Below, piece after piece: positions 17,931 to 53,140 of a DNA stretch of 64,000 bases. Location of the stretch: the IMG/VR virus record IMGVR_UViG_3300047321_000238, positions 1-64,000 of that record. One strand, 5' to 3'. Position 1 is the first letter of the stretch. Each line of letters begins with the position of its first letter. A program made the position numbers and the translations under genes. The notes under the pieces are model-generated. The model had not been told where the DNA came from. It was given only the letters and a program-made list of their open reading frames with translations, and searched no databases.

Positions 17931-18000
17931 ATATTCAAATCCTTTCTCTACATTGCTATAAATTCCTATTACTATAGAAATGTAATAATATAATAAATAA

Positions 18001-18020
18001 GACCTACAAAAAAGTAGGTC
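18001..18020 (-). terminator. Probable intrinsic terminator
   Basis: gacctac-aaaaaa-gtaggtc hairpin followed by a T-rich run on the minus strand, just after the 18036 stop. Confidence 0.55.
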
Positions 18021-18035
18021 CTATCCAGTTTTATT

Positions 18036-18293
18036 TTATTCTATTGTTTTAGTCTTTTTATTCTTCTTGACAATTGGTTCTTGAATAGCTACAACTGGTT
18101 CATCTATAGGTACTTCTTCAACTGTTTTTTGTTTCTCTAATTCATTAGAAATTATAATTAACATCTCTGAAGCCCCTTGAAGTTTATATATCTCTGCTTC
18201 TATTGCAGAAATCTCATTCTTCTTTGAAACAATGTCATTCCCCTTAAGTTTAAGTTGTGCTTGTACATTTTCATACATTGCTTGAAAATCCAT
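18036..18293 (-). CDS. Small coiled-coil hypothetical protein
   Basis: 85-aa ORF, GAGGA RBS, heptad-like N-terminus. Confidence 0.7.
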   Translation of the reverse strand: MDFQAMYENVQAQLKLKGNDIVSKKNEISAIEAEIYKLQGASEMLIIISNELEKQKTVEEVPIDEPVVAIQEPIVKKNKKTKTIE

Positions 18294-18316
18294 TTTAAAA
18301 TCCTCCTCTTATTATA

Positions 18317-18775
18317 TTATACGAATGTAAAGTCTGAACCTAATGTAACCCAATTTAAACCTAGTTTATATTTGAGTACATTATTTACTGAATCTATCCA
18401 TATTGTTGCACCAACAGGTTCAGTATCACTAGTTACTATTCCTGCCGATGTAGACATAGCAGTGTTTATCTTAGCTAATTCATTTGATATTTTAGTTGAA
18501 GTCCATAAGTAAGATAATCCTGTTTTTGTATCATCAACTGATCTATTACCAACTGTGTCAGCATTTCCTCCATCTGCTGTAAAGCCTGGAGGAATATTAG
18601 TTAAACTACTGAAGTCATGTGAATGATTTTCATCAGCTTTATTGTTTAACAAGTCTGTTAATGTTTGTATCTTTAATGAAATGGTTATCCCATCTGCAGT
18701 AAGTATCGCATCTTCGTGAGTTTTAGGATATATGATTTCATTGTCTACATTTTTTATAAACGTAATCTTTGGCAC
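18317..18775 (-). CDS. Short tail-fibre-like structural protein
   Basis: IYPKT, KADENHSHDF and GGNADTVG motifs typical of Firmicutes phage fibre repeats; GTG start with GAAGG RBS. Confidence 0.5.
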   Translation of the reverse strand: MPKITFIKNVDNEIIYPKTHEDAILTADGITISLKIQTLTDLLNNKADENHSHDFSSLTNIPPGFTADGGNADTVGNRSVDDTKTGLSYLWTSTKISNELAKINTAMSTSAGIVTSDTEPVGATIWIDSVNNVLKYKLGLNWVTLGSDFTFV

Positions 18776-18849
18776 AATAAAAACCTTCTTTCTATTTTTA
18801 TTATTTCTAATATATTACTTTGGTAATGCTTAAAATACATATATTTAAT

Positions 18850-21800
18850 CTAAAATAATTTGTATAAAGCATTTTGAACTTTTTGATTTAAATTATATTG
18901 TGTTACTCTTCCGATGTTGGTTATTACTTGTAACCCTGAAGCAGAGGTAGGTTCTACGGATACATCTACGCTATGCAAGCCAACGCCATTTAATAATCCT
19001 AACATATCTCTTTGTAGAGCAAGAGGAGATGGACCATTATGAATATCTTTTATCTCTGGAGCTTTTTGGTATGCAGGTTCATTTTTATTTGAATCATACA
19101 TTCCAAAGTCAGATAATAACATACCTTCATTTTCTATAGTCTTCATCTTAATATTTTCTAAGTTCTCATCTGGCCTCCAACCTGCCCAAAACATATTAGG
19201 TAGATTGTGATTACTAAAGAAAGATTTATTAGATTTAGCTTTATCAACTTTTTCTCCCCATAAAACTTTTAAAGCTTTTTGTTTGTAAGGAGAAATCATC
19301 TTAAGTATCTTCTTCCTAGCTCTAGGATCTTTCTCTTTAGCAAACTCTAAGAAATAGTCTCTATCGTATTTAGGTAAAGCTCTAAGTACATCAGCCGCTG
19401 AAGAGTTATTTGTTAAACCATATATAGTTGTGTCTGCAGCTTTCTTATAAGCTAAAGCTGCTTTAGTATATTTGCCCATTTTATAATACTGTTCAGGAGT
19501 TTGTAACTTATATATTGCATTGCTAATATTGTAATCAAGTTGTTTCTTTACTTTAGCATCGATAGTATATTTATCTACTCTTTCTTTTTGCTTCTGTAAT
19601 CTTAATATTGCTTTCTGATTCTTTTTTTGATTGTATTCAAATTTGTTAACAATAGCTGCAATATTAACGCCGTCTTTTCTCTTAGATAGTCGTGCTGCTT
19701 TATTATATAAACCCATGTACTTCATGTATTCTAATCTGTCAAAGTACTCTTCTAATTCCCACTTCTTTTTAGTGTTCTTAGGAATGTACTTGCCAAACAT
19801 CTCATGATAGTTAAAGCTAGGATTTTTAATAGCTGATAATCCTACTCCGATAACTGCTCCAGCAATTGCCCCTTTTCCACCGCCAATTGTTTCTCCTTCT
19901 TTTTCTGCTATCTTTAATGCATTAGCTAAACCAGGAAACTTATTAGCTGGAACTTTTAATTGTCTAGCAACTGCGAATCCAGCCATACCGAAGTTAGCTG
20001 CACTTGCAATAGGATTATTTAAATGAGCAAATCCATAACCTAAAAATCCAATGGTTGCTGATATATTTGCACCATTCTTAGAATTCCAAACAGAAGCTTT
20101 AGATCCCCAATTCATTCTAGGAATTGCTCCAATAATTCCACCAGTTAAAGCATATGGATTAGTGAAAGCGAATAAAGCATGTGATGCCCATTTAGCTTTT
20201 CCTTCTAAACCTTTAGCTCTAGCTTGATTAGACCAGTACCAACTTGCTAAACCAAGAGCTTGAACTCCTAACCCTTTAGACCAACCAGTTTGTAATGTTG
20301 GCATAATGAATCCTTTAATAGGATGTCCCCATGTAGAATAGTTTGTTCCATATACTTGTTCTTTCTTATAAGATTCCATTGGATCATCTATTCTTAAATA
20401 CTTGTTATGAAGATAAGGAATTTGAGCATGAGCAATTCTTTCAAATATAGGGCCCATCATCTTATTAGAATCACCAGCAGCAAATAATTGATCAGCTAAA
20501 GTATCTTGACTATATTTCTCTTTAGCTTTCTTTTCTTCCCACATCTTCTTTGAGATACTTTCAGCTCCAACATTAACTAATGCACTAATAGATCCAGTAT
20601 TATCTCTTTGTCTAAATTTATTGTTTTCGTATTGTAATTCTACAATCATACCTGGCTTTAAGTATTCATGAATATAACTTTTCTTATTTTCATCATTAAG
20701 AGGCTTGACTCCAGCTAGAGTATATTGTTCATCACTACCGACTACTGTAAATCCTCCAGCATTAGCTACAGTGTTAATAACAGCGTGTCTAGTTTCCATC
20801 TTCTTTCCTGCAAATTGATAATTGTAGAATTTGTGATCGCTAGATTGAACCTTAACCCTCTTTTCTATTTGAGCCATTTCAGTTTTCATTTGAGGAGTTA
20901 ATGATGTTTCTTTCGCAATCTTTTTCCATGTCTTATACTCATCTGAACCAGGAGATATATCTGCTAAGATTTTGTATCTATCAAATGCACCATATCTTCC
21001 ATAACTATCTGGATGTAATTTATTTAAAGTTTCATATCCAGCACCAGGAAGTCTAGCTTCTCCTTTAGTTACTTTCGTATAAGGATCTCCTGTTTGATAT
21101 CTTTCAGGCATCCATAATGGCATAGTATTTCTAAGTGGATTAACTTGTTCGATATCATGGTTTTCATGTGGGAAGAAACGTCTAGCGATTTCCATGAAGT
21201 CTCCACCCATACCGCCTACGCCTTCATCCCAGAATCCTCGAACAAAAGAATTCATTTGTCCAGCTTTTTCTAATTGATATCCATGGCTAGCAGGTAACAT
21301 TGAATCAGCTAAGAATCCATACATACCTGATAATTGTTTAGCTGAGTACATTATGCTAGAAACATAATCACTCTTAGAACCTATTTCATTAACATGTATA
21401 TCATTAAGATATTTATCCTTAGCATTAGCAGCAGCCATAGTGAACGGTATATTTTGTAGTTTAGTATTTTCATTTATAACGCCGTTATCTTGGAATTCGT
21501 TAGCATTATTGCCTCTTGTTTTAATACCTTGATTAACTCCAGCTATTAATGACATTGCAGTTGAACCTGTTGTTAATCCACTAGTTACAAGTCTAGATAA
21601 GCCACTAGTTAACATGTCGCTAATAACTCCACTAGGTTCTTGATTTACATTAACATATTGAACTTGAGTGCCACTACCTCCACCTCTTATAACTGGAACA
21701 ACTGTATGATCAACTCCAGCTAGAGTTTCAGGATATCTTTCTCCATCAAATCCTGCAGATGTTACTTTACCTCTACTATTAAACTTAAGACTATATACAG

Positions 21801-24800
21801 ATTCACTCATTGAAGGCATAGACTTAGCTTTATAATCCATTGGTGTAAAGCCAGCTGGATCAACTCTAATAACTCTGTTTCCAGGTGCTTGTGCTTTGAT
21901 GTCGTTGTTTCTATTAGCTATTATTGATCTAACATCTAACAACGTACCGCTAAGTTCTGATTGATGCATTCTTCTTATAGGCTTTATTAATTGACCTATA
22001 GTAGGATTTAATACTGCTCCCCATGGAGTTTCTTCTTCGAATAACGAGCCTGTTACAGGATATGGTCTATCCCAATAATGTTTTTCTTCAAGCCAATAAG
22101 GATTAGCTAAATATCTTAATGGAGATAATGGATGTCGAAGAGTAGGAATTAAACTGTGTTTCCATTTCTCATCTTCTGAACCATATAGAGAAACATCTTT
22201 ATAATGACTATATGCTTGTCTTATTTTATTTGGTTCATAGTAAGATACTTTTCCTCCACGGAATTCAGAAGCAGAACCGAAACTCCACCATCTACCTTTT
22301 CTAACTGGATCTTCACCATTCTCTAAATAATCAAGATATTCATCTTTATCTTTATAGTCTCCAAGCCAGTAATTAGTAATAGGATTATACATTCTAGAAC
22401 GTCTATGATTGTCAGCCATTCCAGTTACTTGAGCAAATGTTTTAACTCCTACTCCAAAATTAGCTCTGAAGTTATAGTAGTCTTGAACAAAAGAAGTACC
22501 AGTTAAGTTTTCAGCTTCAAAGTTTAAATAACTAGCAGCATAACCTATTCCCATTATAGGCAGTATTCTTTTAAGTCCTAAGAATTTAATTTGATCTAGT
22601 ACACTTCCAGTGTTAGCTTTTGATGCACCTAATCCAAACTTCTCCATTGGAGTTATAAGTCTGTTAAGCATATGGTATGGTAAGAATGTAGCAGTAGTTA
22701 TATCTTTAACATTATTTCTTCCAGCAAAGAATTGTTTACCAAATCCCCTAGCTGCTGCAGCTGCTTTAGTAGAATCATTTAAGCTTTTAATAACATCAAG
22801 AGCTGATATAGATTTTCTCATTGTAACCCATTGATTATTTCTATGACCTTTTTGTATTGAGTTATCTTCTTCTATTACAACGTCTTTTCTCCAACTAGAA
22901 TTACTCTTTATGAAAGAATTGATTCCTGTTCTAAATTCGCTTAAGAACATATCTGTTTGAGCATTCTCAGAACTACCTTTTATTATATGACCAAAGTGTG
23001 ACATGATAGATTGTTTTTTTAGTCTATCTTGAACCTCATGTTGTGCTGAAGAGAATGATGCAGTTTCTTGTTGAAGAATACCCCAATTGAATATATTCTT
23101 CAGATTCTTTCTATCTGCTCCAGTGATATTCATCTTGCTTATTTTACTATAACTTATAGAATATCCTTGAACAAAATTTCCAATATAACTATTCTGATGT
23201 GCAGAATCTCTTAATAAAGCTTCTTTTACTACTTCTCTTTTAAGTAAATCGTTATATTTAAGAATGTTCATTCCATTCTTGTCACCAAGGTTTCCAATTT
23301 GAGCTATAGTATTTATTGAAGATATATTCTTCTTATACTTATTAACTAGAGACTTTAGATCACGATTCATAAATTCATCGTATTCATTTTCTATTAAATG
23401 GCCTGCAATATTATCATGGTTTAATGAGCTTAATACCATTCTTGCATGAGGGCCCAATGTCTTTTGTAATTCATTAATTGTATTTTTAGAAGGAGCGAAT
23501 GTTCTATGATTATATAAACGATTAACTTGATTTACATCTTTACCAAACTTCATCGCTGCTTCTTCATCTATCTTTGCATAAGTATCGTGACTAAACAATC
23601 TTTTAGGTACATTACCAACCCAACTCGAACCTTCACTAAACTTACTAAAGAATCCTCTGAACCTTTCAAGTTCATTTGTTCCTGTTGTATTAAAGTCTAA
23701 CCATTTAAGAGTCTTGTTGTCTTGAACTTTAGTGTCAAAGTTACCTTGTATTCTATTGTTCATTACATTGAAAGAACCATGTCTTCCAGACATAAGATAT
23801 AAATTGTCAGCTTCTTTTACATGCACTAAGTCACCATTATTATATTGGAATATTTTATTTCCTATTTTAAAATGGTCGAATCCTAACATTCCACTTTGTG
23901 ATCCAGTTAGATTTCCTAATACTGAATCAAAAGAACCTTGTGGTAAGTAGAAGAAATCTGGTGCTTTCTTATTGTCTATAAAACTTCTAGCAGAAAATAG
24001 TTTACCAGCGATTGTATCAGCAAACTCTTCTTTAACTTTGTAGCTTAAATCATTAATAGCTTTTGTAGAATAAAGTTCTCCATTTTTATTTACTCTTAGA
24101 GTAGCATTATCGATAACCATATCATTAAATCTATTATCATGTTGAACTAAAGCATGTAATGTATCAATAATATTATCATGACTTCCTTCAAACAGTTCAG
24201 AGTTCTTTATACTTGTTGTTTTGTTATCTACTCCGCTTAACAAGTCTCCAACAGTGGCTGCTCTATCTAAAGTATTTTTAAAGAATGTATCTTTCTTATT
24301 AGTATACTTATCTATAAGCTCTTCTTTATACGTATTTAATAATTGACCTTTAAATTTATCTTGATACTCAGTACTAAACTCTTCTTCTAATCTTTTAGAG
24401 TTATTTAAAGCTTGTTCCATAACATTCATGATGTCATCTTTATGCTCTTCTAAGATAGAACCATTAATCCTATCTTCAAATTCTGATCTGACCAAACTAG
24501 TTCCTTCGGCAGATTCTTGTAGATAAGTACTCTTTTTATTTAAACTCTCATCAACCATTTTGGTTAACTCTGAAAAGAACTCTCCTGAATTTGCTTTTGC
24601 ATTTTCATTTAGTTTTATATTATCAGTAAGAGATGTCATTACATGATTCTTTTGAACAGCATCAAACATTTCATCAGCTAAGTATGTTCCATCAGTTTTT
24701 AGTTTATTATAATGAAGTGCAGAAGATAATAATCCTCTACTATAATCAAGCTCTATACCTGTTTCTCTTCTAGTTGCATTCCAAGTGCTATCATCATTTA

Positions 24801-25035
24801 AAACATTCTTCTTAATGATACCACCTATTGCTTCATAGTCTAAATCTTTAAACGCCTTAGTAGATAAATCATCAGATACTTTGCTTATAGTTGTGCCTAA
24901 GTCTCCTATTGCTTTAGATAGGTATTTCATATTACCAGAATCTTTTAAGGCAAATGCACCTGCAGTAATGCCAGCTACAGCTAAACCTATATTTTTCAAT
25001 CTACTTGATCTTTCATCGTTGTCTGCATATTTCAA
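18850..25035 (-). CDS. Giant virion protein (about 2060 aa), positionally the tape-measure or an ejected protein; degenerate SNase-like domain
   Basis: Follows the two tail-chaperone genes; several Gly/Ala hydrophobic segments; likely TTG start at 25035 behind GGAGGTGA (ORF track starts at 25050). Confidence 0.55.
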   Translation of the reverse strand: MKYADNDERSSRLKNIGLAVAGITAGAFALKDSGNMKYLSKAIGDLGTTISKVSDDLSTKAFKDLDYEAIGGIIKKNVLNDDSTWNATRRETGIELDYSRGLLSSALHYNKLKTDGTYLADEMFDAVQKNHVMTSLTDNIKLNENAKANSGEFFSELTKMVDESLNKKSTYLQESAEGTSLVRSEFEDRINGSILEEHKDDIMNVMEQALNNSKRLEEEFSTEYQDKFKGQLLNTYKEELIDKYTNKKDTFFKNTLDRAATVGDLLSGVDNKTTSIKNSELFEGSHDNIIDTLHALVQHDNRFNDMVIDNATLRVNKNGELYSTKAINDLSYKVKEEFADTIAGKLFSARSFIDNKKAPDFFYLPQGSFDSVLGNLTGSQSGMLGFDHFKIGNKIFQYNNGDLVHVKEADNLYLMSGRHGSFNVMNNRIQGNFDTKVQDNKTLKWLDFNTTGTNELERFRGFFSKFSEGSSWVGNVPKRLFSHDTYAKIDEEAAMKFGKDVNQVNRLYNHRTFAPSKNTINELQKTLGPHARMVLSSLNHDNIAGHLIENEYDEFMNRDLKSLVNKYKKNISSINTIAQIGNLGDKNGMNILKYNDLLKREVVKEALLRDSAHQNSYIGNFVQGYSISYSKISKMNITGADRKNLKNIFNWGILQQETASFSSAQHEVQDRLKKQSIMSHFGHIIKGSSENAQTDMFLSEFRTGINSFIKSNSSWRKDVVIEEDNSIQKGHRNNQWVTMRKSISALDVIKSLNDSTKAAAAARGFGKQFFAGRNNVKDITTATFLPYHMLNRLITPMEKFGLGASKANTGSVLDQIKFLGLKRILPIMGIGYAASYLNFEAENLTGTSFVQDYYNFRANFGVGVKTFAQVTGMADNHRRSRMYNPITNYWLGDYKDKDEYLDYLENGEDPVRKGRWWSFGSASEFRGGKVSYYEPNKIRQAYSHYKDVSLYGSEDEKWKHSLIPTLRHPLSPLRYLANPYWLEEKHYWDRPYPVTGSLFEEETPWGAVLNPTIGQLIKPIRRMHQSELSGTLLDVRSIIANRNNDIKAQAPGNRVIRVDPAGFTPMDYKAKSMPSMSESVYSLKFNSRGKVTSAGFDGERYPETLAGVDHTVVPVIRGGGSGTQVQYVNVNQEPSGVISDMLTSGLSRLVTSGLTTGSTAMSLIAGVNQGIKTRGNNANEFQDNGVINENTKLQNIPFTMAAANAKDKYLNDIHVNEIGSKSDYVSSIMYSAKQLSGMYGFLADSMLPASHGYQLEKAGQMNSFVRGFWDEGVGGMGGDFMEIARRFFPHENHDIEQVNPLRNTMPLWMPERYQTGDPYTKVTKGEARLPGAGYETLNKLHPDSYGRYGAFDRYKILADISPGSDEYKTWKKIAKETSLTPQMKTEMAQIEKRVKVQSSDHKFYNYQFAGKKMETRHAVINTVANAGGFTVVGSDEQYTLAGVKPLNDENKKSYIHEYLKPGMIVELQYENNKFRQRDNTGSISALVNVGAESISKKMWEEKKAKEKYSQDTLADQLFAAGDSNKMMGPIFERIAHAQIPYLHNKYLRIDDPMESYKKEQVYGTNYSTWGHPIKGFIMPTLQTGWSKGLGVQALGLASWYWSNQARAKGLEGKAKWASHALFAFTNPYALTGGIIGAIPRMNWGSKASVWNSKNGANISATIGFLGYGFAHLNNPIASAANFGMAGFAVARQLKVPANKFPGLANALKIAEKEGETIGGGKGAIAGAVIGVGLSAIKNPSFNYHEMFGKYIPKNTKKKWELEEYFDRLEYMKYMGLYNKAARLSKRKDGVNIAAIVNKFEYNQKKNQKAILRLQKQKERVDKYTIDAKVKKQLDYNISNAIYKLQTPEQYYKMGKYTKAALAYKKAADTTIYGLTNNSSAADVLRALPKYDRDYFLEFAKEKDPRARKKILKMISPYKQKALKVLWGEKVDKAKSNKSFFSNHNLPNMFWAGWRPDENLENIKMKTIENEGMLLSDFGMYDSNKNEPAYQKAPEIKDIHNGPSPLALQRDMLGLLNGVGLHSVDVSVEPTSASGLQVITNIGRVTQYNLNQKVQNALYKLF

Positions 25036-25109
25036 TAATTTCACCTCCAAAAAAAAGATAATAATAAAAGCTTGTTAACTTCTATTACTATCTCTTTTAA
25101 TCTCTATAA

Positions 25110-25895
25110 CTATCGACCAACTCTTAAAGCTGGCGAAACTACATCTAATGAATCAACCATTCCACTTTCACCTTCTGTTGCTATTGTATCAGCATCCCAA
25201 TTAATTTCAGGGAACTTCTTTTTCATCTCAGCAAGTTTTTCAGGTGTTAATGCTTCTTTCTTTTTAGTAGTTTTCACTTCTTTAGGTTGATTTTCACTCG
25301 CCTTCACATTGGAGGTGAGTGCTTCTTGTTGCTCTGAAGCCGCTTGCCCACTAGCTTCTTGTTGTTGAAGCAAGTCATAATTAAATTCCATACCTCTTAA
25401 ATTTTGAAGTTTCCATTCAGCTCTAGATAAATATTTAGATGTTCTTTCTACATCCCAATTCTCTATATCTTCAATATCGTATTGAGGAAAAGCTTCATTT
25501 ATTAAGCATGGGATTTGATTCTGCAAATCAAACATTTCAGATCTATAGTAATCCATTATTGCAGTTCTGCTTTCCAAGTCTGCTAAGAAGGAGTTTTCCA
25601 TAATAGTTGTAAATAATCTATTACCAATTCCAGCAGGTAGATCATCTATATCTATAGTTTTAGAATCAGGATAAAGTAAGCATTTAACCATTACTTCATC
25701 CTCTTTATCCATAGTAGATAATGATTCATTTTCAGATATATCTTTATAATCTTTTCTTCCTAGTGGTTTGTATATATAGATTTCACCATCTAAATGTATC
25801 CAATAGACAGTCCTGTACTTAGCTTTTAATTCTTCTATCAATTCAATGATATCTACACTTTGTTCAACTAAACCTCTATCGTTTGTAAGTTTCAT
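25110..25895 (-). CDS. Probable tail assembly chaperone (long)
   Basis: Lies between tube genes and the tape-measure-like gene; YKPLGRKDYKDI...LLYP resembles the neighbouring ORF; own RBS GAGGGTGA. Confidence 0.5.
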   Translation of the reverse strand: MKLTNDRGLVEQSVDIIELIEELKAKYRTVYWIHLDGEIYIYKPLGRKDYKDISENESLSTMDKEDEVMVKCLLYPDSKTIDIDDLPAGIGNRLFTTIMENSFLADLESRTAIMDYYRSEMFDLQNQIPCLINEAFPQYDIEDIENWDVERTSKYLSRAEWKLQNLRGMEFNYDLLQQQEASGQAASEQQEALTSNVKASENQPKEVKTTKKKEALTPEKLAEMKKKFPEINWDADTIATEGESGMVDSLDVVSPALRVGR

Positions 25896-25908: not shown

Positions 25909-26340
25909 TTATAAAGATTCAGTTGCTGATATTTCAAATCCTGAATATTTTAAAATTTCTTCAGATAATACTGTAGCTAGTCCAGCTCTTGAATCGATTA
26001 AGTCACTTGCGTTAGCAGGATATAGTATAGCCATTTTAGCTATAGCTTCTTGCTTTGCTAAGATTTCAACTTCTTCATCTGCATCTAATAATTGTTTGTA
26101 TTCTTTTCTCTTTATTGGCCTCCAGATTACAAACTCATCGTCATCAACAGTGTTTTTGAATACCTTACCGTATAGTGCTTTCCATTCAGGAATTAATTGC
26201 TCTAAGTTTTCTGCAGTAACAGGTGTTGCTACAGGTGCTTTCTTGTCTTTTAAGATAGGCAATTTTGCTGGTGCTTCTGGTATCACCTTTTCAATTTTTG
26301 TTTCTACTTCTGTGTTTTCAATTGTATCATTAAGTTTCAT
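25909..26340 (-). CDS. Probable tail assembly chaperone (short)
   Basis: WRPIKRKEYKQL...ILYP; acidic; position. Confidence 0.5.
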   Translation of the reverse strand: MKLNDTIENTEVETKIEKVIPEAPAKLPILKDKKAPVATPVTAENLEQLIPEWKALYGKVFKNTVDDDEFVIWRPIKRKEYKQLLDADEEVEILAKQEAIAKMAILYPANASDLIDSRAGLATVLSEEILKYSGFEISATESL

Positions 26341-26417
26341 TTTTTATTCCTCCTAGATTTTATTTGCTTTCATCATAATTTGATTACTATATTTAATCGT
26401 TGATATAACATACTATT

Positions 26418-30211: not shown

Positions 30212-30248
30212 ATATAAGAGATGTAGCTCTTGTCCACATCTCTTATAT
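30212..30248 (-). terminator. Intrinsic terminator after tail tube gene
   Basis: atataagagatgt...acatctcttatat inverted repeat followed by a T-run on the minus strand. Confidence 0.7.
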
Positions 30249-30270
30249 ATTACAGTCTATATTCTTTTTA

Positions 30271-39308: not shown

Positions 39309-39421
39309 CTTAATTTTTCCTCCTCATTATCTAATCATTTATATTTGTGGAAGTACACTCTCATGCACTTCTCACAACTATATTACTAATCAAATTTATT
39401 TTATTACTATTCTTATTGAAA

Positions 39422-41087: not shown

Positions 41088-42407
41088 TTAACCTAATAGT
41101 ATACTAGATAAAATATCTCTTACGCTTTCTGTCATATCATTATTACTATCTGATTTTGCTTCATTCACATTGATGTTTTGTTTTTTTACAATTTCTTCGG
41201 ATTTTAATCCTTCATCTTCTACTTTTGTAATGTTTTTAACACCATTGATACCTGATAACTCTTCTTTTAAATCTAATATAGAATCTTTTATTGATTCAGT
41301 AGATCTGCTAGTTAAACTTTCTTTTAATACAACTGGTTTGTTAAGAGCAGTTCTAAGAACGTTTAAATTCTCTTCAGCTGATTCTCTTAATTCAACTTTC
41401 ACGCTTATAAGATTACTCTCTGCAGCTTCTTTTAACACAATCTCTTGCTTTAAAGATTTTTCTACTGTATCTAATCTATCAACTATAATAACTAAGTCAG
41501 ATTTAGATTTAGCCAAGTCTTTAGCAACAGTTTCTTTCTCTGTTTCTAATTTAATTACTTTAGCTTTTAATTCTGCTATCTCAGCATCCTTAGCTGTGAT
41601 TATTGATTCCTCAACTTTTTCTTTAGTCTCAGTAGCTGTTGCTTCAACGACTTGGTCTTTCTTAACCTCTTCTTCTATTTTTTGACTTTCTTGTACTTCT
41701 AAGTTTTGTTTGTTATCTTCCATTTTTTTAAACTCCCCTTCTCTTAAATTTAGGCTTTCTGATAATCCTACTTGTTTATTTTGTTTTACTTTATACGTTC
41801 TAATATTATGAGTGTATATGTCAGAAGGAACGATAACGTATGAAAGTTCTTTTGCTTCCATTTCGTAAACTTCCCAATAACATGTTTTGTTATTTTCATA
41901 AACTGCTCCTCTATCATGTCCACATACAGAATCTCCATTTTGATCTAATTCAATTTGTTCTCCACATATTGAACATCTTACGTCATGAGCAGTGACTCCT
42001 ACAGAAACAGTTTTAAGTCTGCCATCTTGTATTTGTTCTTTACCTTCTTTATCTGGAACATTACATGTAAATAATAATGCTGGTGTTCCAGATCTAGTAT
42101 TTTTAGTTACTTTTTCAGCACTAACTACTCTACCGATTATTTTACCGTTCTGCTCGTTATGATGCATGATTAACGGTTTTTGATAAGGCTTTGTCCAACT
42201 TGGAATGCTTGAATCCAAAGCTGACTCCATGTACCAAGTAAAGTTTCTAGTAGGGCCAACGTGTAGTCCTTCTATCTCTTGCATTATAGAATCTTCAGAT
42301 ATAGGATCTATATCCACTACGTATTCTTTACAGTCTAAATTAGTGTTTTTTGTTGCACCTTTATTTAGAACTTTACTTCCTACATATTCTTGTAACTCAA
42401 TTGCCAT
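41088..42407 (-). CDS. Prohead protease with C-terminal scaffold coiled coil
   Basis: MHHN..IIGRV, TVSVG, CSICG..CGH and ELSYVIVPSD; long acidic coiled-coil tail. Confidence 0.75.
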   Translation of the reverse strand: MAIELQEYVGSKVLNKGATKNTNLDCKEYVVDIDPISEDSIMQEIEGLHVGPTRNFTWYMESALDSSIPSWTKPYQKPLIMHHNEQNGKIIGRVVSAEKVTKNTRSGTPALLFTCNVPDKEGKEQIQDGRLKTVSVGVTAHDVRCSICGEQIELDQNGDSVCGHDRGAVYENNKTCYWEVYEMEAKELSYVIVPSDIYTHNIRTYKVKQNKQVGLSESLNLREGEFKKMEDNKQNLEVQESQKIEEEVKKDQVVEATATETKEKVEESIITAKDAEIAELKAKVIKLETEKETVAKDLAKSKSDLVIIVDRLDTVEKSLKQEIVLKEAAESNLISVKVELRESAEENLNVLRTALNKPVVLKESLTSRSTESIKDSILDLKEELSGINGVKNITKVEDEGLKSEEIVKKQNINVNEAKSDSNNDMTESVRDILSSILLG

Positions 42408-44632: not shown

Positions 44633-44935
44633 CTACTTTACTATTACTAAGATATCTGTCTCCTTTAGAATTAGAAATCTGTCGTCCCCTACAGCAATTT
44701 CTGATCCTGCAAACTTATTAAATATTACTGTTTGTCCAGCTTCAACACTTAATGGTATTAAATCTCCATTAGCTGTTAATCTTCCTTGACCTACTGCAAT
44801 GATAACTCCTTGGTCTGGTTTGGCTTGACCTGGATTATTATTAGCTATAAAGATACCACTCTTAGTAGTAACCTCTTTTTCTACTTCTGGAAGTTGAATT
44901 ATAATATTATCGTTTATTGGTTGTAATGTCATCAT
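44633..44935 (-). CDS. groES: Co-chaperonin GroES
   Basis: LQPINDNIII, TKSGIFI, GVIIAVGQGR, VIFNKFAGSEI and LILKETDIL. Confidence 0.92.
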   Translation of the reverse strand: MMTLQPINDNIIIQLPEVEKEVTTKSGIFIANNNPGQAKPDQGVIIAVGQGRLTANGDLIPLSVEAGQTVIFNKFAGSEIAVGDDRFLILKETDILVIVK

Positions 44936-48217: not shown

Positions 48218-48709
48218 TTATTGTAAATCTACAGTAAATGTTCCTGCAGGTACAGTCTTTTCAAAAGTAGTTGCTTCTGCTTTCCAGTCAGCTACAGCTT
48301 TTTCAATTCTATCTTGCATAGTTTTTTCAAACAATTCACATTTAAGTTCTGCTACTTTTAAAGCAGGTAATACAGTTGCTACGTCAAATTGAACTTGAGC
48401 TTCTAATTTGCCATCACATTTGAACACTAAAGAACTAGTCTTAGTAAGTTGTACAACATTAGTAGGAGTAGCAAATTTAAATGCAATTGTATCTACGCCA
48501 ACTACTCCAGTTAAAGATGCAGAGAAATCTCCACTAACGTCTTTAGTTATAAAACCTGAAAATAAACTTCCTGTATCTACTGATACTGCACCGAAATCAT
48601 TTTCCAAACCAGCTTCTATAATATCGTCTGGATCATCTTGTACAAATTTTCTAACAACAGTAGAAGTAAAAGCTTTATTAGTTAAATCTCTTAATACATC
48701 AAATTTCAT
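48218..48709 (-). CDS. Hypothetical protein
   Basis: ORF with AAGGA RBS. Confidence 0.65.
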   Translation of the reverse strand: MKFDVLRDLTNKAFTSTVVRKFVQDDPDDIIEAGLENDFGAVSVDTGSLFSGFITKDVSGDFSASLTGVVGVDTIAFKFATPTNVVQLTKTSSLVFKCDGKLEAQVQFDVATVLPALKVAELKCELFEKTMQDRIEKAVADWKAEATTFEKTVPAGTFTVDLQ

Positions 48710-48823
48710 TATTAGTCACGTCCTTTATATATATTTCACCATCATCAAGTGCAATCTACACATAATCATTACTTCATATTTTTCTGTTTTTAACATAGTA
48801 CTGAAAACGTTAATTACTTTTTT

Positions 48824-49393: not shown

Positions 49394-49429
49394 AACGTAA
49401 CATCCTCCAAACATTTAATTAATAGCTAT

Positions 49430-50257
49430 TTATTGACCATATGCTTTTTGTTGACCATATAATTCTGAGTTACTCATTTGGCCGCCTCTACCAAACATCG
49501 AGAATATTAATCCCCCACCAACTGCTATAGGTATAGCTTGTTTCAAGAACGAATCCATTTTACCTTGAGTCTGTTTTTGCTCTTCCTTTTTTGTACTTTT
49601 TATTTGATTCTTTAATTGATCGTTATTTTCTGCATACATTTTTCTTAAAACTTCAGGATCTTTTATATTTACAGGACCATGATCTGGTATTTTTGGGCCA
49701 AAATGCTCTTTTGGAATTGTATTATTAAATTCATTCATAAAATTAACTCTGCCAGTTCTCATAGTGTCAGCAATATTTTCTGAAGATCTTCCATTTAAAT
49801 AACTTAATGCATTACCTAATTTAGTATCAGTAGCTGCAACGTTGTTTCTTGTTTTATTAGCTCTTAACTTACTAATTTGATAATCTAAATCAGGATCTGC
49901 CTTACTAACTTTTAAAGTTTGTCCCATATCAGCAGCTCTTTGATTCCACATTTTTTCGTTATTTATAGTTTTTTGTTTTTTCATTGCATCATCATAAAAA
50001 GCATTTGGTCCTTTTGAATTCCTAAAAATACTTAAATCAGGTTCTTCAGTAACATTATCTAGAACATTTTTAACATACTTACTTTCATTTTGTTCAAATT
50101 TTCTTCCTTGTGACATTATAGTATGTTCTAAAGAATTTGCTTCGAATTTTTTACCCTGATTAAGTATTAATTCGCGAACTGATTTTGCTGTTCCTCTTTT
50201 TAATTCAAGATTTATTCCTTTAGTTGCAAGTTGTTCTGCAATATTTCCAAAACCCAT
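49430..50257 (-). CDS. Hypothetical protein with C-terminal hydrophobic helix (possible internal virion protein)
   Basis: ORF with RBS; AIPIAVGGGLIFSMFG. Confidence 0.6.
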   Translation of the reverse strand: MGFGNIAEQLATKGINLELKRGTAKSVRELILNQGKKFEANSLEHTIMSQGRKFEQNESKYVKNVLDNVTEEPDLSIFRNSKGPNAFYDDAMKKQKTINNEKMWNQRAADMGQTLKVSKADPDLDYQISKLRANKTRNNVAATDTKLGNALSYLNGRSSENIADTMRTGRVNFMNEFNNTIPKEHFGPKIPDHGPVNIKDPEVLRKMYAENNDQLKNQIKSTKKEEQKQTQGKMDSFLKQAIPIAVGGGLIFSMFGRGGQMSNSELYGQQKAYGQ

Positions 50258-50286
50258 TATATTTCACTTCCTTTCTTAGCTATTAA

Positions 50287-50721
50287 TTACCTATTTAAAT
50301 AAGCAGCTTCATTTCCCATTAATGTTTGTTGTAAATTGTATTGACTTGCTTTAGCCATTTGCATTCCTGCTTGTCTCATTGTGAAAGCTTGATTGTAATC
50401 ATTAAAGCTAGAATTAACAAAAGGAACTTGTTTTCCTTGTTGATTCATTTGTCTTGTTAATTTACCTAATGATTCATATCCTTCTACGGCCATCTTAGGA
50501 AGTGCTGGTAGTAATTGCATTGCCATCGTTGGTACAAAACCTAATGATTGATACAATGCGAAATTTCCTACACCAGCAACTGTTGCTCCTAATCTACTTG
50601 AACCACCTTCTCTTGCAGTCTTGTAGTCAGATGCAGCAAAAGCAACGTCCATACCAACACCAATCATTGAACCAAGACCTATCTTTTCTAAAGCACCTTT
50701 TGCAAAAGGGATCTTCGCCAT
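50287..50721 (-). CDS. Gly/Ala-rich membrane-like protein
   Basis: ORF with RBS; hydrophobic GxxxG segments; Gln/Met-rich tail. Confidence 0.6.
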   Translation of the reverse strand: MAKIPFAKGALEKIGLGSMIGVGMDVAFAASDYKTAREGGSSRLGATVAGVGNFALYQSLGFVPTMAMQLLPALPKMAVEGYESLGKLTRQMNQQGKQVPFVNSSFNDYNQAFTMRQAGMQMAKASQYNLQQTLMGNEAAYLNR

Positions 50722-50732
50722 ATTATTTCCTC

Positions 50733-51362
50733 CTATCTATTTTTGAACATAGAGAATACTAAGTCTCCAGTTGCACCTGCATTGTTTGAATAACTTCCTC
50801 CACTAGATTGTTGTTGTACTGGAACTATTGGTGTAGCATTTCTTATTATTCCATCATTAGTTCCCATTCTACTTTTCTCAAAAGCACTTACTCCATCAGC
50901 AAGACCTTTAAATGCAGATGCTCCAAGTATTAATGGAATAGCAGTTGCTTTATTTAATTTAAATTCTCCTAAGTCTCCTAAGCCAACTGGACCTTTTGGA
51001 GCTTTTATCATTCCTCTACCAACAGTGCCTAATGCGTTTACACCAATCATTGCAGCACCAGCTACACCCAAAGCAGCACCTGAAGCTACAGTTGCTCCAC
51101 CAAATGCTGCAAGTCCTGCTCCCCATGCTGCTCCTCTACCAGCAGCTTTTCTTGGATCAACTTGACCATCTTGATCTGCAAGTACTGCACCAGCAGTAGC
51201 TCCAGCTAACACTGTTCCTACTACGGCAGCAGCACGATTATCAAATTGATGCATTAGAGATTTTCCTGGTACTTTAGCTATATCCATACTAATCTCTCCA
51301 ACAGCACGAGCAGAACCTAAACCTAATTTACCTATACCTTTTAATATACCACCTAAGCCCAT
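50733..51362 (-). CDS. Gly/Ala-rich membrane-like protein
   Basis: Several glycine-zipper-like hydrophobic segments. Confidence 0.6.
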   Translation of the reverse strand: MGLGGILKGIGKLGLGSARAVGEISMDIAKVPGKSLMHQFDNRAAAVVGTVLAGATAGAVLADQDGQVDPRKAAGRGAAWGAGLAAFGGATVASGAALGVAGAAMIGVNALGTVGRGMIKAPKGPVGLGDLGEFKLNKATAIPLILGASAFKGLADGVSAFEKSRMGTNDGIIRNATPIVPVQQQSSGGSYSNNAGATGDLVFSMFKNR

Positions 51363-51378
51363 AAGCTATTTCATCTCC

Positions 51379-51723
51379 TTATACAAATGGAACTCCTACT
51401 AAATTAGTACTACCGTTACCATCTTTATATATTCCACCACCAGTTAATACTCGTCCTGCGGCAGCTGCTCCTAAATAAGATCCAGCTATTTTACCAGCAT
51501 CCCACTTAGTAACTTTACCTTCTGTATCGAAATTTTTACCGAAGGTCTTTGTTAATGATTCCATTCCTTCTCCTCGTAAGGCTCTGCCTGCAGCTTCTAA
51601 TCCACCAAAGCCATTGTTAGCTATAGCATTAATAGCTTTATTAGATCCATTTCTTTTTGTACCATTATATGCTGCTTTAACTAGTGCGGCAGCTTCTTTA
51701 GCAGCATCATCGTATAAACCCAT
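51379..51723 (-). CDS. Gly/Ala-rich small protein
   Basis: ORF with AAGGAG RBS. Confidence 0.6.
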   Translation of the reverse strand: MGLYDDAAKEAAALVKAAYNGTKRNGSNKAINAIANNGFGGLEAAGRALRGEGMESLTKTFGKNFDTEGKVTKWDAGKIAGSYLGAAAAGRVLTGGGIYKDGNGSTNLVGVPFV

Positions 51724-51743
51724 ATTAATTCACTCCTTCTTTA

Positions 51744-52445
51744 TTAATTTTGTTCTTTGACATCTACAAACTCTGCAGGAGCTTCATCGATTATGAATTC
51801 TGCATTACCTGACATAACTGTATTAATCATATCAGTTAACGAATCCTTATCACTAATCTCACCTTTCTTATTCTTTCTAGTAGCAAGCATTAAATCATAT
51901 ATCTCATTTCTTTTTCTTTCTGTTCTTTCTAATGCTTCCCAATGTTTTGATATCTCAGGTTTGAAATAAACCTCACCTTGTTCACTAACACCAGCAAATA
52001 CATCTTCTACTAGAACGCCTGCTTTATTAAGTAAGGCTTTGCATCTCTCAATCATAATGTCGTGATTAATTAATGATATAACTAAATTCTTATCAGTGAA
52101 ACTTGCATCTTCTAGATCAAAGTCATTTTCATATCCAGCATATCGTAACTCAATTTGGGCCGTCTCTACTGGACACGGTTCACCAAGTGGTGCCAAATTA
52201 TATGGAAGCAAACTACAAGTTTCTGCATACGGACATCCGTCAGCTTTACAACTAAGCGGTATTCTAGCATACATTCCCGTTTTTGTAGATAACATACTCA
52301 TAGCAGCTCTTTTAGCTTCAACTCCTACAGCAGAGTAACCCCACATATTTTCTAAGTTCTTTTCAAAGTTTTCTCTATTTATCATAGCCTCACACTGAGT
52401 ATCATCTACAGCTAAATCAGATTGTAATACTTCTTCTTCATCCAT
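51744..52445 (-). CDS. Cys-cluster protein, possible terminase small subunit
   Basis: CKADGCPYAETC..PCPVE, then helical segment ending LATRKNK; near the start of the late module; function inferred from position only. Confidence 0.35.
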   Translation of the reverse strand: MDEEEVLQSDLAVDDTQCEAMINRENFEKNLENMWGYSAVGVEAKRAAMSMLSTKTGMYARIPLSCKADGCPYAETCSLLPYNLAPLGEPCPVETAQIELRYAGYENDFDLEDASFTDKNLVISLINHDIMIERCKALLNKAGVLVEDVFAGVSEQGEVYFKPEISKHWEALERTERKRNEIYDLMLATRKNKKGEISDKDSLTDMINTVMSGNAEFIIDEAPAEFVDVKEQN

Positions 52446-52861
52446 TATTTATCACCACCAGTCTCTTCTTCTATTTCCTCTACCTTGACCATACCCTTAT
52501 ACTGTGGTCCGATATCTCCCATAATAGGATGTTCATCTTTATACATTTCATCTTCGATCATTTTCATCTCAGAAGGATATAGTATAAATTTAGCACCATC
52601 TTCTTCAATTCCTAAGATTTCTAATTTAGTACAAGTGAAATAATATCCTATATTATAATCATCACTTCCGAAACTTTCTTGATATACTTCTACTCCAGTC
52701 AATTTAAATCTCTTTGTTTGTATTGAAGTAATGTCATCAAAGTACAGATGTGTCAAAATAATACCTTGAATCTTAAATCCTGATCTATCCTCATTAGGTA
52801 CTCTATCAAATGTCACTTTTCCATTTACAGAAAGATCATTGTTTATTATTATGTTTGCCAT
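52445..52861 (-). CDS. Hypothetical protein, first gene of late module
   Basis: ORF with AAGGGGG RBS. Confidence 0.65.
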   Translation of the reverse strand: MANIIINNDLSVNGKVTFDRVPNEDRSGFKIQGIILTHLYFDDITSIQTKRFKLTGVEVYQESFGSDDYNIGYYFTCTKLEILGIEEDGAKFILYPSEMKMIEDEMYKDEHPIMGDIGPQYKGMVKVEEIEEETGGDK

Positions 52862-53140
52862 GTTAAATTCCCCCTTGTTCTTTTCTTTTCTCTATATATT
52901 ACTATCTATATCTCATATATTAATAACGTCTTGCCATATATTACTTATTCTAAATATTCTATTTAATTTCCAAATATTACCTTATATAGAGATGAAAAAT
53001 TTATAAAAAATAATTTTAAAAAATAGAAAAGTTGAACTTTTAAAAAAAGCCTATAGGGAAAAACGAAAAATATAAAAAATTTCTAGGGGAAGTAGGTATA
53101 TATATATATGTATATATGTTGAAAATGTAGCCCCATGGGT
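52862..53140. promoter_or_regulatory. Divergent late/early control region with three TATTAC(T/C) copies, A-tracts and a TA run
   Basis: Strand switch; TATTACT at 52897 and 52939, TATTACC at 52975; A5-A7 tracts 52995-53080; (TA)n 53097-53117. Confidence 0.5.

What the first reader, a model, noticed from the sequence alone, without database searches (positions are those of the whole stretch)
17967..52981. Recurrent AGTAATA motif upstream of late genes: candidate promoter for the phage RNAP
Seen on the plus strand as TATTACT at 17967, 18813, 25083, 39381, 39402, 44642, 52897 and 52939, with variants GATTACT 26382, CATTACT 48767 and TATTACC 52975. Five copies lie 36-48 nt upstream of minus-strand starts (17930, 18775, 25035, 26340, 52861); others precede the capsid, portal and 48709 genes. 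No shared -35 element is evident. Inference: a short late promoter, analogous to the T4 TATAAATA element.
Basis: partly seen in the sequence, partly recalled or inferred. Interest (0 to 1): 0.62.

Follow-up and report, generated by a model that had tools for sequence, protein, structure and literature searches.

The report
Conserved late promoter of jumbo phage
A short DNA word (AGTAATA) in front of the virion and lysis genes of an uncultured 248-kb phage looks like a real late-gene promoter that related phages also keep, but it is more likely read by the host RNA polymerase carrying a phage sigma factor than by the phage's own YonO-like polymerase.

Summary
All listed copies exist. TATTACT is not enriched over the whole window (33 found, 29 expected). 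However, 7 of the 24 gene-sense copies lie in the 1,744 nt of intergenic DNA (0.78 expected, p about 1e-5), and none lies there in antisense.

The consensus is (T/A)AGTAATAT(A), 25-65 nt upstream of start codons. About a quarter of sites also carry ATGTTA(A) exactly 17-18 bp upstream, so a -35-like element does exist.

The motif is kept in front of orthologous genes in four related 240-kb phages whose intergenic sequence has otherwise diverged. It also precedes a lone plus-strand holin gene and the first gene of the minus-strand block, two places where a promoter must exist.

The reading as a late promoter is therefore well supported. The assignment to the phage polymerase is not:
- The 1,672-aa protein does have a QDE-1/YonO-type fold, but complete relatives that keep the motif lack it.
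- A 295-aa sigma-like protein (outside the window) is present in every relative that is at least half complete.
- That protein has a sigma region-4 domain and is predicted to dock on the beta-prime clamp helices.

No transcript data exist. This is a new member of a known kind.

The parts
17966..17974 (-). Motif copy TAGTAATAG. Its G is 42 nt before the ATG of the 2,867-aa virion-block gene (9327-17930). A terminator-like hairpin (18027-17994) lies just upstream.
   Evidence: (18.3 bits). The G002 ortholog has the motif; the G001 ortholog does not.
18812..18820 (-). Motif copy AAGTAATAT, 43 nt before the start of gene 18317-18775.
   Evidence: 20.8 bits. Conserved upstream of the G001 ortholog.
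25082..25110 (-). Bipartite copy: GTTA (25110-25107), 18 nt, then GTAAT. The core is TAGTAATAG, upstream of the 2,066-aa gene 18850-25035.
   Evidence: The G001 and G002 orthologs keep the motif, and G001 also keeps GTTAAT at the -35 position.
26381..26409 (-). Bipartite copy ATGTTATAT ... TAGTAATCA, 47 nt before the start of gene 25909-26340.
   Evidence: 20.1 bits. Conserved in G001 and G002.
30247..30255 (-). Variant CTGTAATAT, upstream of the 907-aa tail-tube-like gene 27467-30190. It directly abuts a 15-bp hairpin with a T-run (30248-30212). It is ambiguous: either a promoter whose transcript starts with a 5' hairpin, or part of a terminator module.
   Evidence: (19.0 bits). GTAAT followed by the hairpin is kept in G001, G002, G004 and G005.
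39380..39409 (-). Tandem pair TAGTAATAA and TAGTAATAT, 99 and 78 nt before the major capsid gene (38094-39308). A 5'-UTR stem-loop follows.
   Evidence: 26.2 bits. The tandem pair is kept in G001 and G002 and absent in more distant relatives.
41140..41148 (-). TAGTAATAA inside the 3' end of gene 41088-42407, 99 nt before the start at 41047. It may be an internal promoter, or it may be conserved only because it is coding sequence.
   Evidence: (17.2 bits).
44641..44649 (-). TTAGTAATAG inside ORF 44633-44935, about 21-27 nt before the portal ATG (44621). This copy is doubtful.
   Evidence: It is not among the weight-matrix hits of 10 bits or more.
48766..48794 (-). Bipartite copy ATGTTAAAAA ... 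AAGTAATGA, 63 nt before the start of gene 48218-48709. A second, weaker copy (AAGTAATTA) lies at 48811-48819.
   Evidence: 24.4 bits. The G001 ortholog keeps both halves.
52896..52982 (-). Three copies (TAGTAATAT 52896-52904, AAGTAATAT 52938-52946, AGGTAATAT 52974-52982) in the 509-nt divergent region. They stand in front of the first gene of the minus-strand block (52445-52861).
   Evidence: 29.4 and 19.0 bits. Orthologs in G001, G002 and G004 keep a copy.
57224..62242 (+). Gene of the QDE-1/YonO-type single-chain two-barrel RNA polymerase. It is 1,672 aa from the TTG start, or 1,647 aa as called elsewhere. It carries RHPIS and DFDID motifs.

Best explanation
(T/A)AGTAATAT(A) is the -10-type core of a phage-specific late promoter class in a clade of roughly 240-kb myophages of low-GC Firmicutes related to Bacillus phage 0305phi8-36.

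**Where it sits.** It lies 25-65 nt upstream of the start codons of virion and tail genes, the holin, a fibre gene and a few others such as nrdD, often just after an intrinsic terminator. About a quarter of the copies also carry ATGTTA(A) with a 17-bp spacer, which is the geometry of sigma-70-family promoters.

**Proposed cascade (inferred).**
1. Host sigma-A holoenzyme reads consensus TTGACA-17-TATAAT promoters in the replication and metabolism regions.
2. One of those transcription units supplies a conserved 295-aa phage sigma-like protein ('sigma-2', genome 193814-194701, outside the window).
3. This sigma replaces host sigma-A on the host core enzyme and directs it to the AGTAATA promoters.

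**Shown versus inferred.**
- Shown: the motif's enrichment, orientation, placement and conservation; the sigma-like fold.
- Inferred: that the element is a transcription start signal.
- More weakly inferred: that sigma-2 rather than the YonO-like enzyme reads it.

**My odds.**
- The element is a promoter: about 0.85.
For: **Enrichment and orientation.**
- Window: 7 intergenic sense copies against 0.78 expected; 0 antisense.
- Whole genome, 40-nt weight matrix: 21 hits of 14 bits or more against 0.4 in Markov controls. The 14 seed sites match by construction. Nearly all hits lie upstream of genes in the sense orientation.

**Places where a promoter must exist.**
- The best hit in the genome (32.6 bits; 25.1 when left out of the matrix) lies 38 nt before the lone plus-strand holin gene at 189656.
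- Three copies head the minus-strand block.

**Bipartite form.** GTTA-N18-GTAAT gives 13 hits against about 5 at other spacings, and 6 intergenic hits against 0-2. The offset-specific test gives p 6e-11, or 4e-4 without this genome.

**Conservation in relatives.**
- TAGTAATA is a leading non-Shine-Dalgarno upstream word in two relatives: 10 against 1.2 expected in G001 and 12 against 1.2 in G002.
- The motif recurs upstream of most orthologous genes in G001, G002 and G004 despite diverged flanks.
- A matrix built here finds 4-10 times more sense intergenic hits than coding hits in four other genomes, and at most one antisense-only hit.

**Sigma-A promoters lie elsewhere.**
- Consensus sigma-A promoters occur only in non-structural regions.
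- Sigma-70-type matches in the structural block are not above chance: 57 against 74 expected, and 78 against 81.

**Sigma-2.**
- Pfam Sigma70_r4 and r4_2 domains.
- 75%, 68% and 53% identical in G001, G002 and G004.
- Found in 11 of 11 related records that are at least 50% complete; 395 homologs in total.
- The model's C-terminal domain superposes on sigma region 4 (Z about 8, rmsd 1.6-2.5 A). All top Foldseek hits are sigma factors.
- Its N-terminal domain is predicted to bind B. subtilis beta-prime residues 259-287, the clamp helices. The score is 0.79 against a best control of 0.16. That mark was reached by 58 of 80 solved complexes and 2 of 110 mismatched pairs. The three runs agree in at least 75% of contacts and the partner's pLDDT is at least 85.

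**Precedent.** Late genes of crAss-like phi14:2 and of Thermus phage P23-45 are read by the host polymerase, although both phages carry two-barrel polymerases of their own.
Against: - There are no transcript 5' ends. No RNA run holds this phage, so promoter function itself is inferred.
- Only about 25% of sites here, about 8% in G001 and G002, and none in G004 or G005 show the -35-like half.
- If AGTAAT is aligned with TATAAT, the invariant G falls at position -11. Sigma-70-family factors normally need an A there, so the register is uncertain.
- Sigma-2 shows no Pfam region-2 match. Its N-terminal domain is assigned only by weak fold matches and by a complex prediction that may merely echo solved sigma-core structures.
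- The test of whether the motif depends on the YonO-like enzyme rests on few independent lineages. The motif is also weaker in the genomes that lack it.
- SPbeta YonO does transcribe late genes.
- Some motif-bearing genes are not structural: nrdD and a 105-aa ORF.
Confidence: 0.5

Rival explanations
1. AGTAATA is the promoter of the phage's own QDE-1/YonO-type single-chain RNA polymerase (57224-62242). That enzyme would be made early from the head of the plus-strand block and would then transcribe the late genes, as YonO does in SPbeta.
For: - The enzyme is real. It has RHPIS and DFDID motifs. Its model (pTM 0.76) matches QDE-1 at E 3.6e-5 over about 930 columns, and phi14:2 gp66 at E 1.2e-3.
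- SPbeta YonO transcribes the late operon.
- The gene sits near the start of the plus-strand block.
- The motif is strongest, and the -35-like half is found only, in G000, G001 and G002, the genomes analysed that carry this enzyme.
Against: - An 18-sequence profile of the enzyme finds nothing in complete G004 and G008 or in 92%-complete G005.
- G004 nevertheless keeps AGTAATA: 12 sense, 2 antisense, 3.4 expected. It also has the motif in front of about 7 of 11 orthologous genes.
- A bipartite element with a 17-bp spacer is not what is known for single-chain phage polymerases. No common motif was found for phi14:2 gp66, and a single contiguous motif each was found for the P23-45 enzymes.
- The 1.68 kb upstream of SPbeta yonK, which holds the YonO start site, has no AGTAAT.
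- In phi14:2 and P23-45 such enzymes read early genes, not late ones.
Confidence: 0.2
2. The host's own holoenzyme reads the element as a weak -10 (TAATAT, with A at -11 and T at -7). It would do so with the primary sigma or a host alternative sigma, helped by a phage activator that recognises the flanking AG or the upstream half.
For: - In the other register, TAATAT shares T-12, A-11 and T-7 with TATAAT.
- phi14:2 middle and late promoters resemble primary-sigma promoters and are read by sigma-70 holoenzyme in vitro.
- The phage carries further HTH and sigma-like ORFs: sigma-1 at 132408-133655, and a weak match at 169515.
Against: - The most invariant letters are G-T-A-A-T, not the TAnnnT pattern expected of a primary-sigma -10 element.
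- Perfect TTGACA-17-TATAAT promoters exist in the same genome but never in front of structural genes.
- None of the motif sites passes a sigma-70 consensus scan.
- The upstream half, ATGTTA, is unlike TTGACA.
- From my own knowledge, the motif matches none of the Bacillus or Clostridium alternative-sigma consensus sequences (H, E, K, F, G, B, D).
Confidence: 0.15
3. The element is not a promoter. It acts in RNA or as a protein-binding site: an intercistronic processing site (AGUAAUAU), a translational operator, or an operator for a repressor of late genes.
For: - Most copies lie between co-oriented genes that could be co-transcribed.
- One copy (30253) abuts a terminator-like hairpin, and the capsid copies precede a conserved stem-loop.
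- No transcript data exist.
Against: - Copies stand where no upstream transcript in that sense is expected: at the head of the divergent block, in front of the plus-strand holin embedded among minus-strand genes, and directly after strong terminators.
- The distance to the ATG varies from 25 to 119 nt and the copies do not overlap the Shine-Dalgarno site, which argues against a translational operator.
- A second element at a fixed 17-bp spacing fits recognition of double-stranded DNA.
Confidence: 0.1

Closest known systems
Bacillus phage SPO1 middle and late promoters, read by host core polymerase plus the phage sigmas gp28 and gp33/gp34
   Same: - A large virulent phage of a low-GC Gram-positive host.
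- Phage-encoded sigma-70-family proteins redirect the host core enzyme.
- The target promoters are bipartite, and their -35 and -10 hexamers differ from TTGACA/TATAAT.
   Different: - The hexamer sequences differ.
- Sigma-2 is only distantly related to sigmas of SPO1-like phages; tblastn links it only to 0305phi8-36-type phages.
- Most copies here lack a recognisable -35 half.
- None of this has been tested biochemically.
T4 late promoter TATAAATA (gp55, gp33 and the gp45 clamp)
   Same: A short AT-rich -10-type word that marks late genes, is read by the host core enzyme with a phage sigma-like factor, and mostly has no -35 element.
   Different: - The word differs: AGTAATAT, with an invariant G.
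- A quarter of the copies have a -35-like half at a 17-bp spacing.
- The candidate sigma has a region-4 domain, which gp55 lacks (my own knowledge).
- I did not search for a gp33-like or clamp-coupled system.
SPbeta YonO and its late promoter P(yonO) (PMC5467207)
   Same: A single-chain two-barrel RNA polymerase of the QDE-1/YonO class, encoded by a phage of a Firmicute. In SPbeta it reads the late genes.
   Different: - The enzyme here is 1,672 aa and has no BLAST-level similarity to YonO.
- The YonO promoter sequence is still undefined.
- The region upstream of yonK has no AGTAAT.
- The motif here persists in relatives without the enzyme.
The 21-bp promoter candidates of Bacillus phage 0305phi8-36 (PMC2147016)
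   Same: The same phage lineage, by terminase, synteny and the sigma-2 ortholog gp193. These too are phage-specific motifs in promoter-sized gaps, and they were proposed for the YonO-like gp99.
   Different: - Their recoverable core is GC-rich, C(C)GTTCGCACG(G), with 9-10 copies.
- AGTAATA, GTAATAT and TAGTAAT do not occur in upstream regions of that genome.
- They lie in the non-structural arm and were proposed as middle promoters.
crAss-like phage phi14:2 and Thermus phage P23-45 transcription schemes (bioRxiv 10.1101/2020.03.07.982082 and 10.1101/2022.12.01.518664)
   Same: Phage two-barrel polymerases coexist with host-polymerase transcription of late genes from promoters resembling -35/-10 elements. 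The promoter motifs were traced across related genomes in the same way as here.
   Different: In those systems start sites were mapped and enzymes assayed; here nothing is. Here a dedicated phage sigma is the proposed specificity factor.

Membership tests
Sigma-70-family-dependent promoter (-35/-10 type) | A conserved -10-type element at a short, fairly constant distance upstream of the transcript start | tested here: inconclusive
   A conserved 8-9-nt core lies 25-65 nt before start codons. No start sites are available, because no RNA run holds this phage.
Sigma-70-family-dependent promoter (-35/-10 type) | A second element 16-18 bp upstream of the -10 element | tested here: met
   GTTA lies exactly 18 nt before GTAAT at 6 of 24 sites here, at 2 of 25 in G001 and at 2 of 22 in G002, against about 0.1 per other offset. 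It is absent from most sites and from G004 and G005.
Sigma-70-family-dependent promoter (-35/-10 type) | A cognate sigma factor is available that can bind the core polymerase | tested here: met
   - Sigma-2 has Pfam region 4 and a region-4 fold with Z about 8.
- All top Foldseek hits are sigma factors.
- Predicted docking on the beta-prime clamp helices scores 0.79 against a best control of 0.16. That mark was reached by 58 of 80 solved complexes and 2 of 110 mismatched pairs.
- This is a prediction only, and it may reflect likeness to solved complexes.
Sigma-70-family-dependent promoter (-35/-10 type) | Specific initiation by the holoenzyme at the element | not testable with these tools
   This needs in vitro transcription or start-site mapping.
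Host primary-sigma (sigma-A) promoter | A match to TTGACA-(16-18)-TATAAT | tested here: not met
   None of the motif sites appears in the consensus scans. Near-perfect sigma-A promoters lie only in non-structural regions.
T4-type late promoter | TATAAATA at -10, no -35 element, and a sigma lacking region 4 | tested here: not met
   The word differs, a -35-like half is present in a subset of sites, and the candidate sigma has region 4.
Promoter of a YonO/QDE-1-type phage RNA polymerase | An enzyme of that class is encoded by the phage | tested here: met
   The model of residues 500-1400 matches QDE-1 at E 3.6e-5 with probability 1.00, and phi14:2 gp66 at E 1.2e-3. The RxP and DFDID motifs are invariant across the family.
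Promoter of a YonO/QDE-1-type phage RNA polymerase | The motif occurs only in genomes that carry the enzyme | tested here: not met
   The enzyme's profile is absent from complete G004 and G008 and from 92%-complete G005. AGTAATA is still enriched and sense-oriented in G004 and stands upstream of orthologous genes there.
Promoter of a YonO/QDE-1-type phage RNA polymerase | Similarity to the one mapped YonO promoter region (SPbeta, upstream of yonK) | tested here: inconclusive
   There is no AGTAAT in the 1.68-kb region. The start site could not be placed in phage coordinates, and the two enzymes are very distant.
0305phi8-36 21-bp promoter candidates | A shared sequence motif | tested here: not met
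   The core there is CGTTCGCACG. AGTAATA, GTAATAT and TAGTAAT have no upstream copies in that genome.

The most novel reading that the evidence does not exclude
AGTAATA, with its optional ATGTTA half, is after all the recognition sequence of the 1,672-aa QDE-1/YonO-type polymerase. Relatives without a detectable copy would then use a diverged enzyme that the profile missed. This would be the first defined promoter consensus for this class of single-chain two-barrel DNA-dependent RNA polymerases. It would sit within a three-polymerase programme: a possible polymerase-like domain in the tape-measure-position virion protein, the YonO-like enzyme, and the host core with phage sigmas.
Probability: 0.15. 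Interest if true: 0.75.

Novelty: new member of a known kind. Interest (0 to 1): 0.45.

Why it matters
- It gives a concrete, testable late-promoter consensus for an uncultured but widespread clade of roughly 240-kb phages of Firmicutes. The conserved sigma-like protein alone has 395 homologs.
- It separates three candidate transcription machineries in these phages: host sigma-A, phage sigma-like proteins, and a YonO-type polymerase.
- It identifies gp193 of the type phage 0305phi8-36 as a previously unrecognised sigma-like protein. That weakens the 2007 argument that the lack of a sigma factor points to the phage polymerase.
- Which promoters YonO-type enzymes recognise is still an open question. 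This clade contains genomes with and without the enzyme that share the same late motif, which makes it a natural comparison set.

Tried and rejected
- **Whole-window enrichment of TATTACT:** none. Only the intergenic, oriented test is meaningful.
- **Transcript evidence:** no RNA run holds the phage, only DNA metagenomes from rhizosphere, wastewater, freshwater, soil and sediment.
- **Strict GTTA-N18-GTAAT counts over whole relatives:** no different from the reversed-pattern control. The signal shows only among upstream sites.
- **CATAATAT in G004:** I first took it for the ortholog of the motif. It is a separate, more general promoter-like class with its own upstream AGTAGTCTTTTT, found before replication genes and tRNAs.
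unlikely. It is found only in G000 and G002, while G001 keeps the motif.
- **A second motif in the plus-strand block for the YonO-like enzyme:** none found. ATATGTATAC is not enriched.
- **The YonO-like protein by sequence:** tblastn against phages, PHROGs, Pfam and PDB gave nothing or only a weak 14.5-bit PF05183 match. Only the fold comparison settled it.
- **The giant 2,867-aa protein as a polymerase:** the conserved RxP...D(F/H)DGD signature has no support from hhalign against the YonO-like family, from a PDB profile search or from the protein atlas. 0305phi8-36 ORF146 lacks the signature.
- **Literature search for the motif words:** no paper.
- **Expression studies of the cultured relatives:** none turned up in a name search.

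Full report
**Context**

The window is the first 64 kb of a 247,883-bp virus record with direct terminal repeats. GC content is about 31% and Shine-Dalgarno sites (GGAGG) are strong.

The large terminase is closest to Moorella phage MTATph1 (43% identity), then to Bacillus jumbo phages vB_BceM_WH1, Edson, KLEB27-3 and 0305phi8-36.

Genes run on the minus strand from 38 to 52,861 and again from 185.5 kb to the right end. They run on the plus strand from 53.4 to 185.4 kb.

The window's minus-strand block is the virion module:
- terminase, portal and major capsid protein;
- tail sheath and tail-tube paralogs;
- three giant proteins of 2,066, 2,867 and 3,081 aa.

It is syntenic with 0305phi8-36 ORF117-147.

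**The observation**

Over the whole window TATTACT is not enriched: 33 matches against 29.2 in shuffles.

Restricted to intergenic DNA and to the sense of the genes, the picture changes.
- 7 of the 24 sense copies fall in the 1,744 intergenic nucleotides.
- Only 0.78 are expected by length (p 8e-6).
- Markov simulations of the intergenic composition give a mean of 0.77 and a maximum of 5 in 2,000 runs.
- No intergenic copy is antisense.

A blind word count over upstream regions ranks GTAATAT (19 found, 4.1 expected) and AGTAATAT (11 found, 1.5 expected) directly after the ribosome-binding words.

Aligned sites give (T/A)AGTAATAT(A). G-T-A-A-T is nearly invariant.

A 40-nt weight matrix finds 21 sites of 14 bits or more in the genome, against 0.4 in Markov controls. 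The 14 seed sites match by construction. Almost all sites lie 25-65 nt upstream of a start codon in the sense orientation.

**A second half-site**

Scanning spacings shows otherwise.
- GTTA-N18-GTAAT occurs 13 times, against about 5 at most other spacings.
- Six of those are intergenic, against 0-2 at other spacings.
- Among all upstream AGTAAT sites, GTTA sits at that one offset in 6 of 24 sites here, 2 of 25 in G001 and 2 of 22 in G002.
- The background is about 0.1 per offset. This gives p 6e-11 overall and 4e-4 without this genome.

In promoter terms this reads ATGTTA(A), a 17-bp spacer, then AGTAAT. The half-site is optional. It was not seen in G004 or G005.

**Placement**

Two positions must hold a promoter, and both carry the motif.
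- The 509-nt divergent region in front of the first minus-strand gene has three copies.
- A lone plus-strand holin gene (189656-189943, Pfam Phage_holin_5_2) sits among minus-strand genes. It has the best site in the genome, with both halves, 38 nt before its ATG.

Other features of placement:
- The 17972 copy directly follows a terminator-like hairpin.
- Downstream genes include the three-gene giant-protein region, tail-tube-like and capsid genes, and a fibre gene with an Mtd_N domain.
- Two exceptions are nrdD and a 105-aa ORF.
- 'Late' therefore fits most targets but not all.

**Relatives**

The capsid protein retrieved 21 related loci from viral contigs. I took four whole genomes:

| Genome | Capsid identity | Note |
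|---|---|---|
| G001 | 86% | GC 25% |
| G002 | 73% | |
| G004 | 70% | direct terminal repeats, complete |
| G005 | 68% | 92% complete |

Findings in these genomes:
- De novo, TAGTAATA is a leading non-Shine-Dalgarno upstream word in G001 (10 found, 1.2 expected) and in G002 (12 found, 1.2 expected).
- AGTAATA counts in upstream regions, as sense/antisense/expected, are 14/4/4.5 in G001, 18/3/3.8 in G002, 12/2/3.4 in G004 and 8/1/3.4 in G005.
- The motif reappears at similar distances upstream of most orthologs of the motif-bearing genes, although the surrounding intergenic sequence is not alignable.
- A 12-nt matrix built only from this genome gives 4-10 times more sense intergenic hits than coding hits in the four others, with at most one antisense-only hit.

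This footprint is the strongest evidence that the element is functional.

**Which polymerase?**

*Host sigma-A.* Near-perfect TTGACA-17-TATAAT promoters exist, for example at 154092 and 193749. They occur only in replication and metabolism regions. In the structural block, sigma-70-type matches are at or below chance, and no motif site qualifies.

*The YonO-like enzyme.* The 1,672-aa protein has invariant RHPIS and DFDID motifs. A model of its core (pTM 0.76) matches QDE-1 (E 3.6e-5), plant RDR2 and phi14:2 gp66 (E 1.2e-3).
- Orthologs are in G001, G002 and G003.
- An 18-row profile finds nothing in complete G004 and G008 or in G005.
- G004 nevertheless keeps the motif.

*Phage sigma-like proteins.* Sigma-1 (132408-133655, regions 2 and 4) occurs only in G000 and G002.

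Sigma-2 (193814-194701, 295 aa, region 4 by Pfam) is conserved far more widely.
- It is 75%, 68% and 53% identical in G001, G002 and G004.
- It is present in all 11 related records that are at least half complete.
- It has 395 homologs.
- 0305phi8-36 gp193 is its ortholog (hhalign probability 98%, E 3e-13).

Structural evidence for sigma-2:
- The model has a sigma region-4 domain (Z about 8, rmsd 1.6-2.5 A over 57-59 residues).
- Every top Foldseek hit is a sigma factor, although with weak E-values.
- Its N-terminal domain is predicted to bind B. subtilis beta-prime at residues 259-287, the clamp helices.
- The score is 0.79 against a best control of 0.16.
- That mark was reached by 58 of 80 solved complexes and 2 of 110 mismatched pairs.
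- The runs agree in at least 75% of contacts, and the partner's pLDDT is at least 85.
- The result may show likeness to solved sigma-core complexes rather than real binding.

I therefore favour host core polymerase plus sigma-2, at about even odds. The YonO-like enzyme remains a live rival.

**Comparison with known systems**

- The YonO promoter is still undefined. The 1.68 kb upstream of SPbeta yonK holds no AGTAAT.
- The 21-bp promoter candidates of 0305phi8-36 have a GC-rich core, CGTTCGCACG. AGTAATA, GTAATAT and TAGTAAT are absent from that genome's upstream regions.
- In phi14:2 and P23-45 the phage two-barrel enzymes read early genes, and the host enzyme reads late genes.
- The nearest functional analogues are the sigma cascades of SPO1 and T4 (my own knowledge).

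**Limits**

- No start sites, expression data or host are known.
- The register of the -10 word is uncertain.
- The independence of the motif from the YonO-like enzyme rests on two or three lineages.
- My gene calls are simple longest-ORF calls.

**Verdict**

This is a real, conserved promoter-like element. The link to the phage polymerase is not.

Noticed in passing
window 9327-17930 (-), residues about 2250-2295 of the 2,867-aa protein: A conserved signature TRFPR, about 38 residues, then MD(H/F)DGD occurs in the orthologs of G000, G001, G002 and G004. It resembles the R-x-P ... DxDGD catalytic signature of two-barrel RNA polymerases. The gene sits where 0305phi8-36 has its virion 'tape measure' ORF146, which recalls the tape-measure-fused virion polymerase of Thermus phage P23-45. 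There is no support from hhalign, a PDB profile search or the protein atlas, and ORF146 itself lacks the signature.
   Followed up: partly
genome 193814-194701 (-), outside the window; 0305phi8-36 ORF193 (L125:13986-14849): A 295-aa sigma-like protein is conserved throughout the clade. Its ortholog in the type phage 0305phi8-36 is annotated as hypothetical, although the 2007 analysis argued from the absence of sigma factors.
   Followed up: yes
window 56,700-57,200 (+): About seven repeats of a Shine-Dalgarno-like unit, AAAGGAGGT(G/T)GAT..., lie in the 560-nt gap upstream of the YonO-like gene. They could mark tiny ORFs or decoy ribosome sites.
   Followed up: no
window 30212-30255 (-): GTAATAT is followed at once by a 15-bp hairpin and a T-run, in front of the tail-tube-like gene. 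This arrangement is kept in all five genomes. It may give a leader with a 5' hairpin, or it may be a combined terminator-promoter module.
   Followed up: partly
window 39309-39380 (-), and L016-L036 upstream of the capsid gene: A stem-loop lies in the capsid gene leader at a conserved position in nearly all relatives, although its sequence differs. It is probably a 5' mRNA stabiliser.
   Followed up: no
window about 49,415-49,430 and other gaps; intergenic regions of G001 and G005: The palindrome TTAATAGCTATTAA is strongly over-represented in intergenic regions of relatives. GCTATTAA occurs 17 times against 0.6 expected in G001. It is present in both orientations, so it may be an operator or a structural repeat.
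   Followed up: no
window 53371-53850 (+): The first plus-strand ORF carries a GGDEF (diguanylate cyclase) domain, E 1.3e-20.
   Followed up: no
G004 (L093-L104), many intergenic regions: This relative has its own bipartite motif, AGTAGTCTTTTT ... CATAATAT. CATAATAT occurs 16 times against 1.2 expected, in front of replication genes and tRNAs. It is a different promoter-like class from AGTAATA.
   Followed up: partly
genome 159402 (+), upstream of nrdD 159445-161664: The late-type motif also precedes the anaerobic ribonucleotide reductase gene, and this is conserved in G001 and G004. The motif is therefore not restricted to virion genes. The gene also hints at an anaerobic host.
   Followed up: partly
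genome 196,750-197,350 (-), outside the window: Three tandem small ORFs encode lysine-rich peptides of 40-50 residues; two of the three end in TRMSASK. My ORF caller missed them.
   Followed up: no
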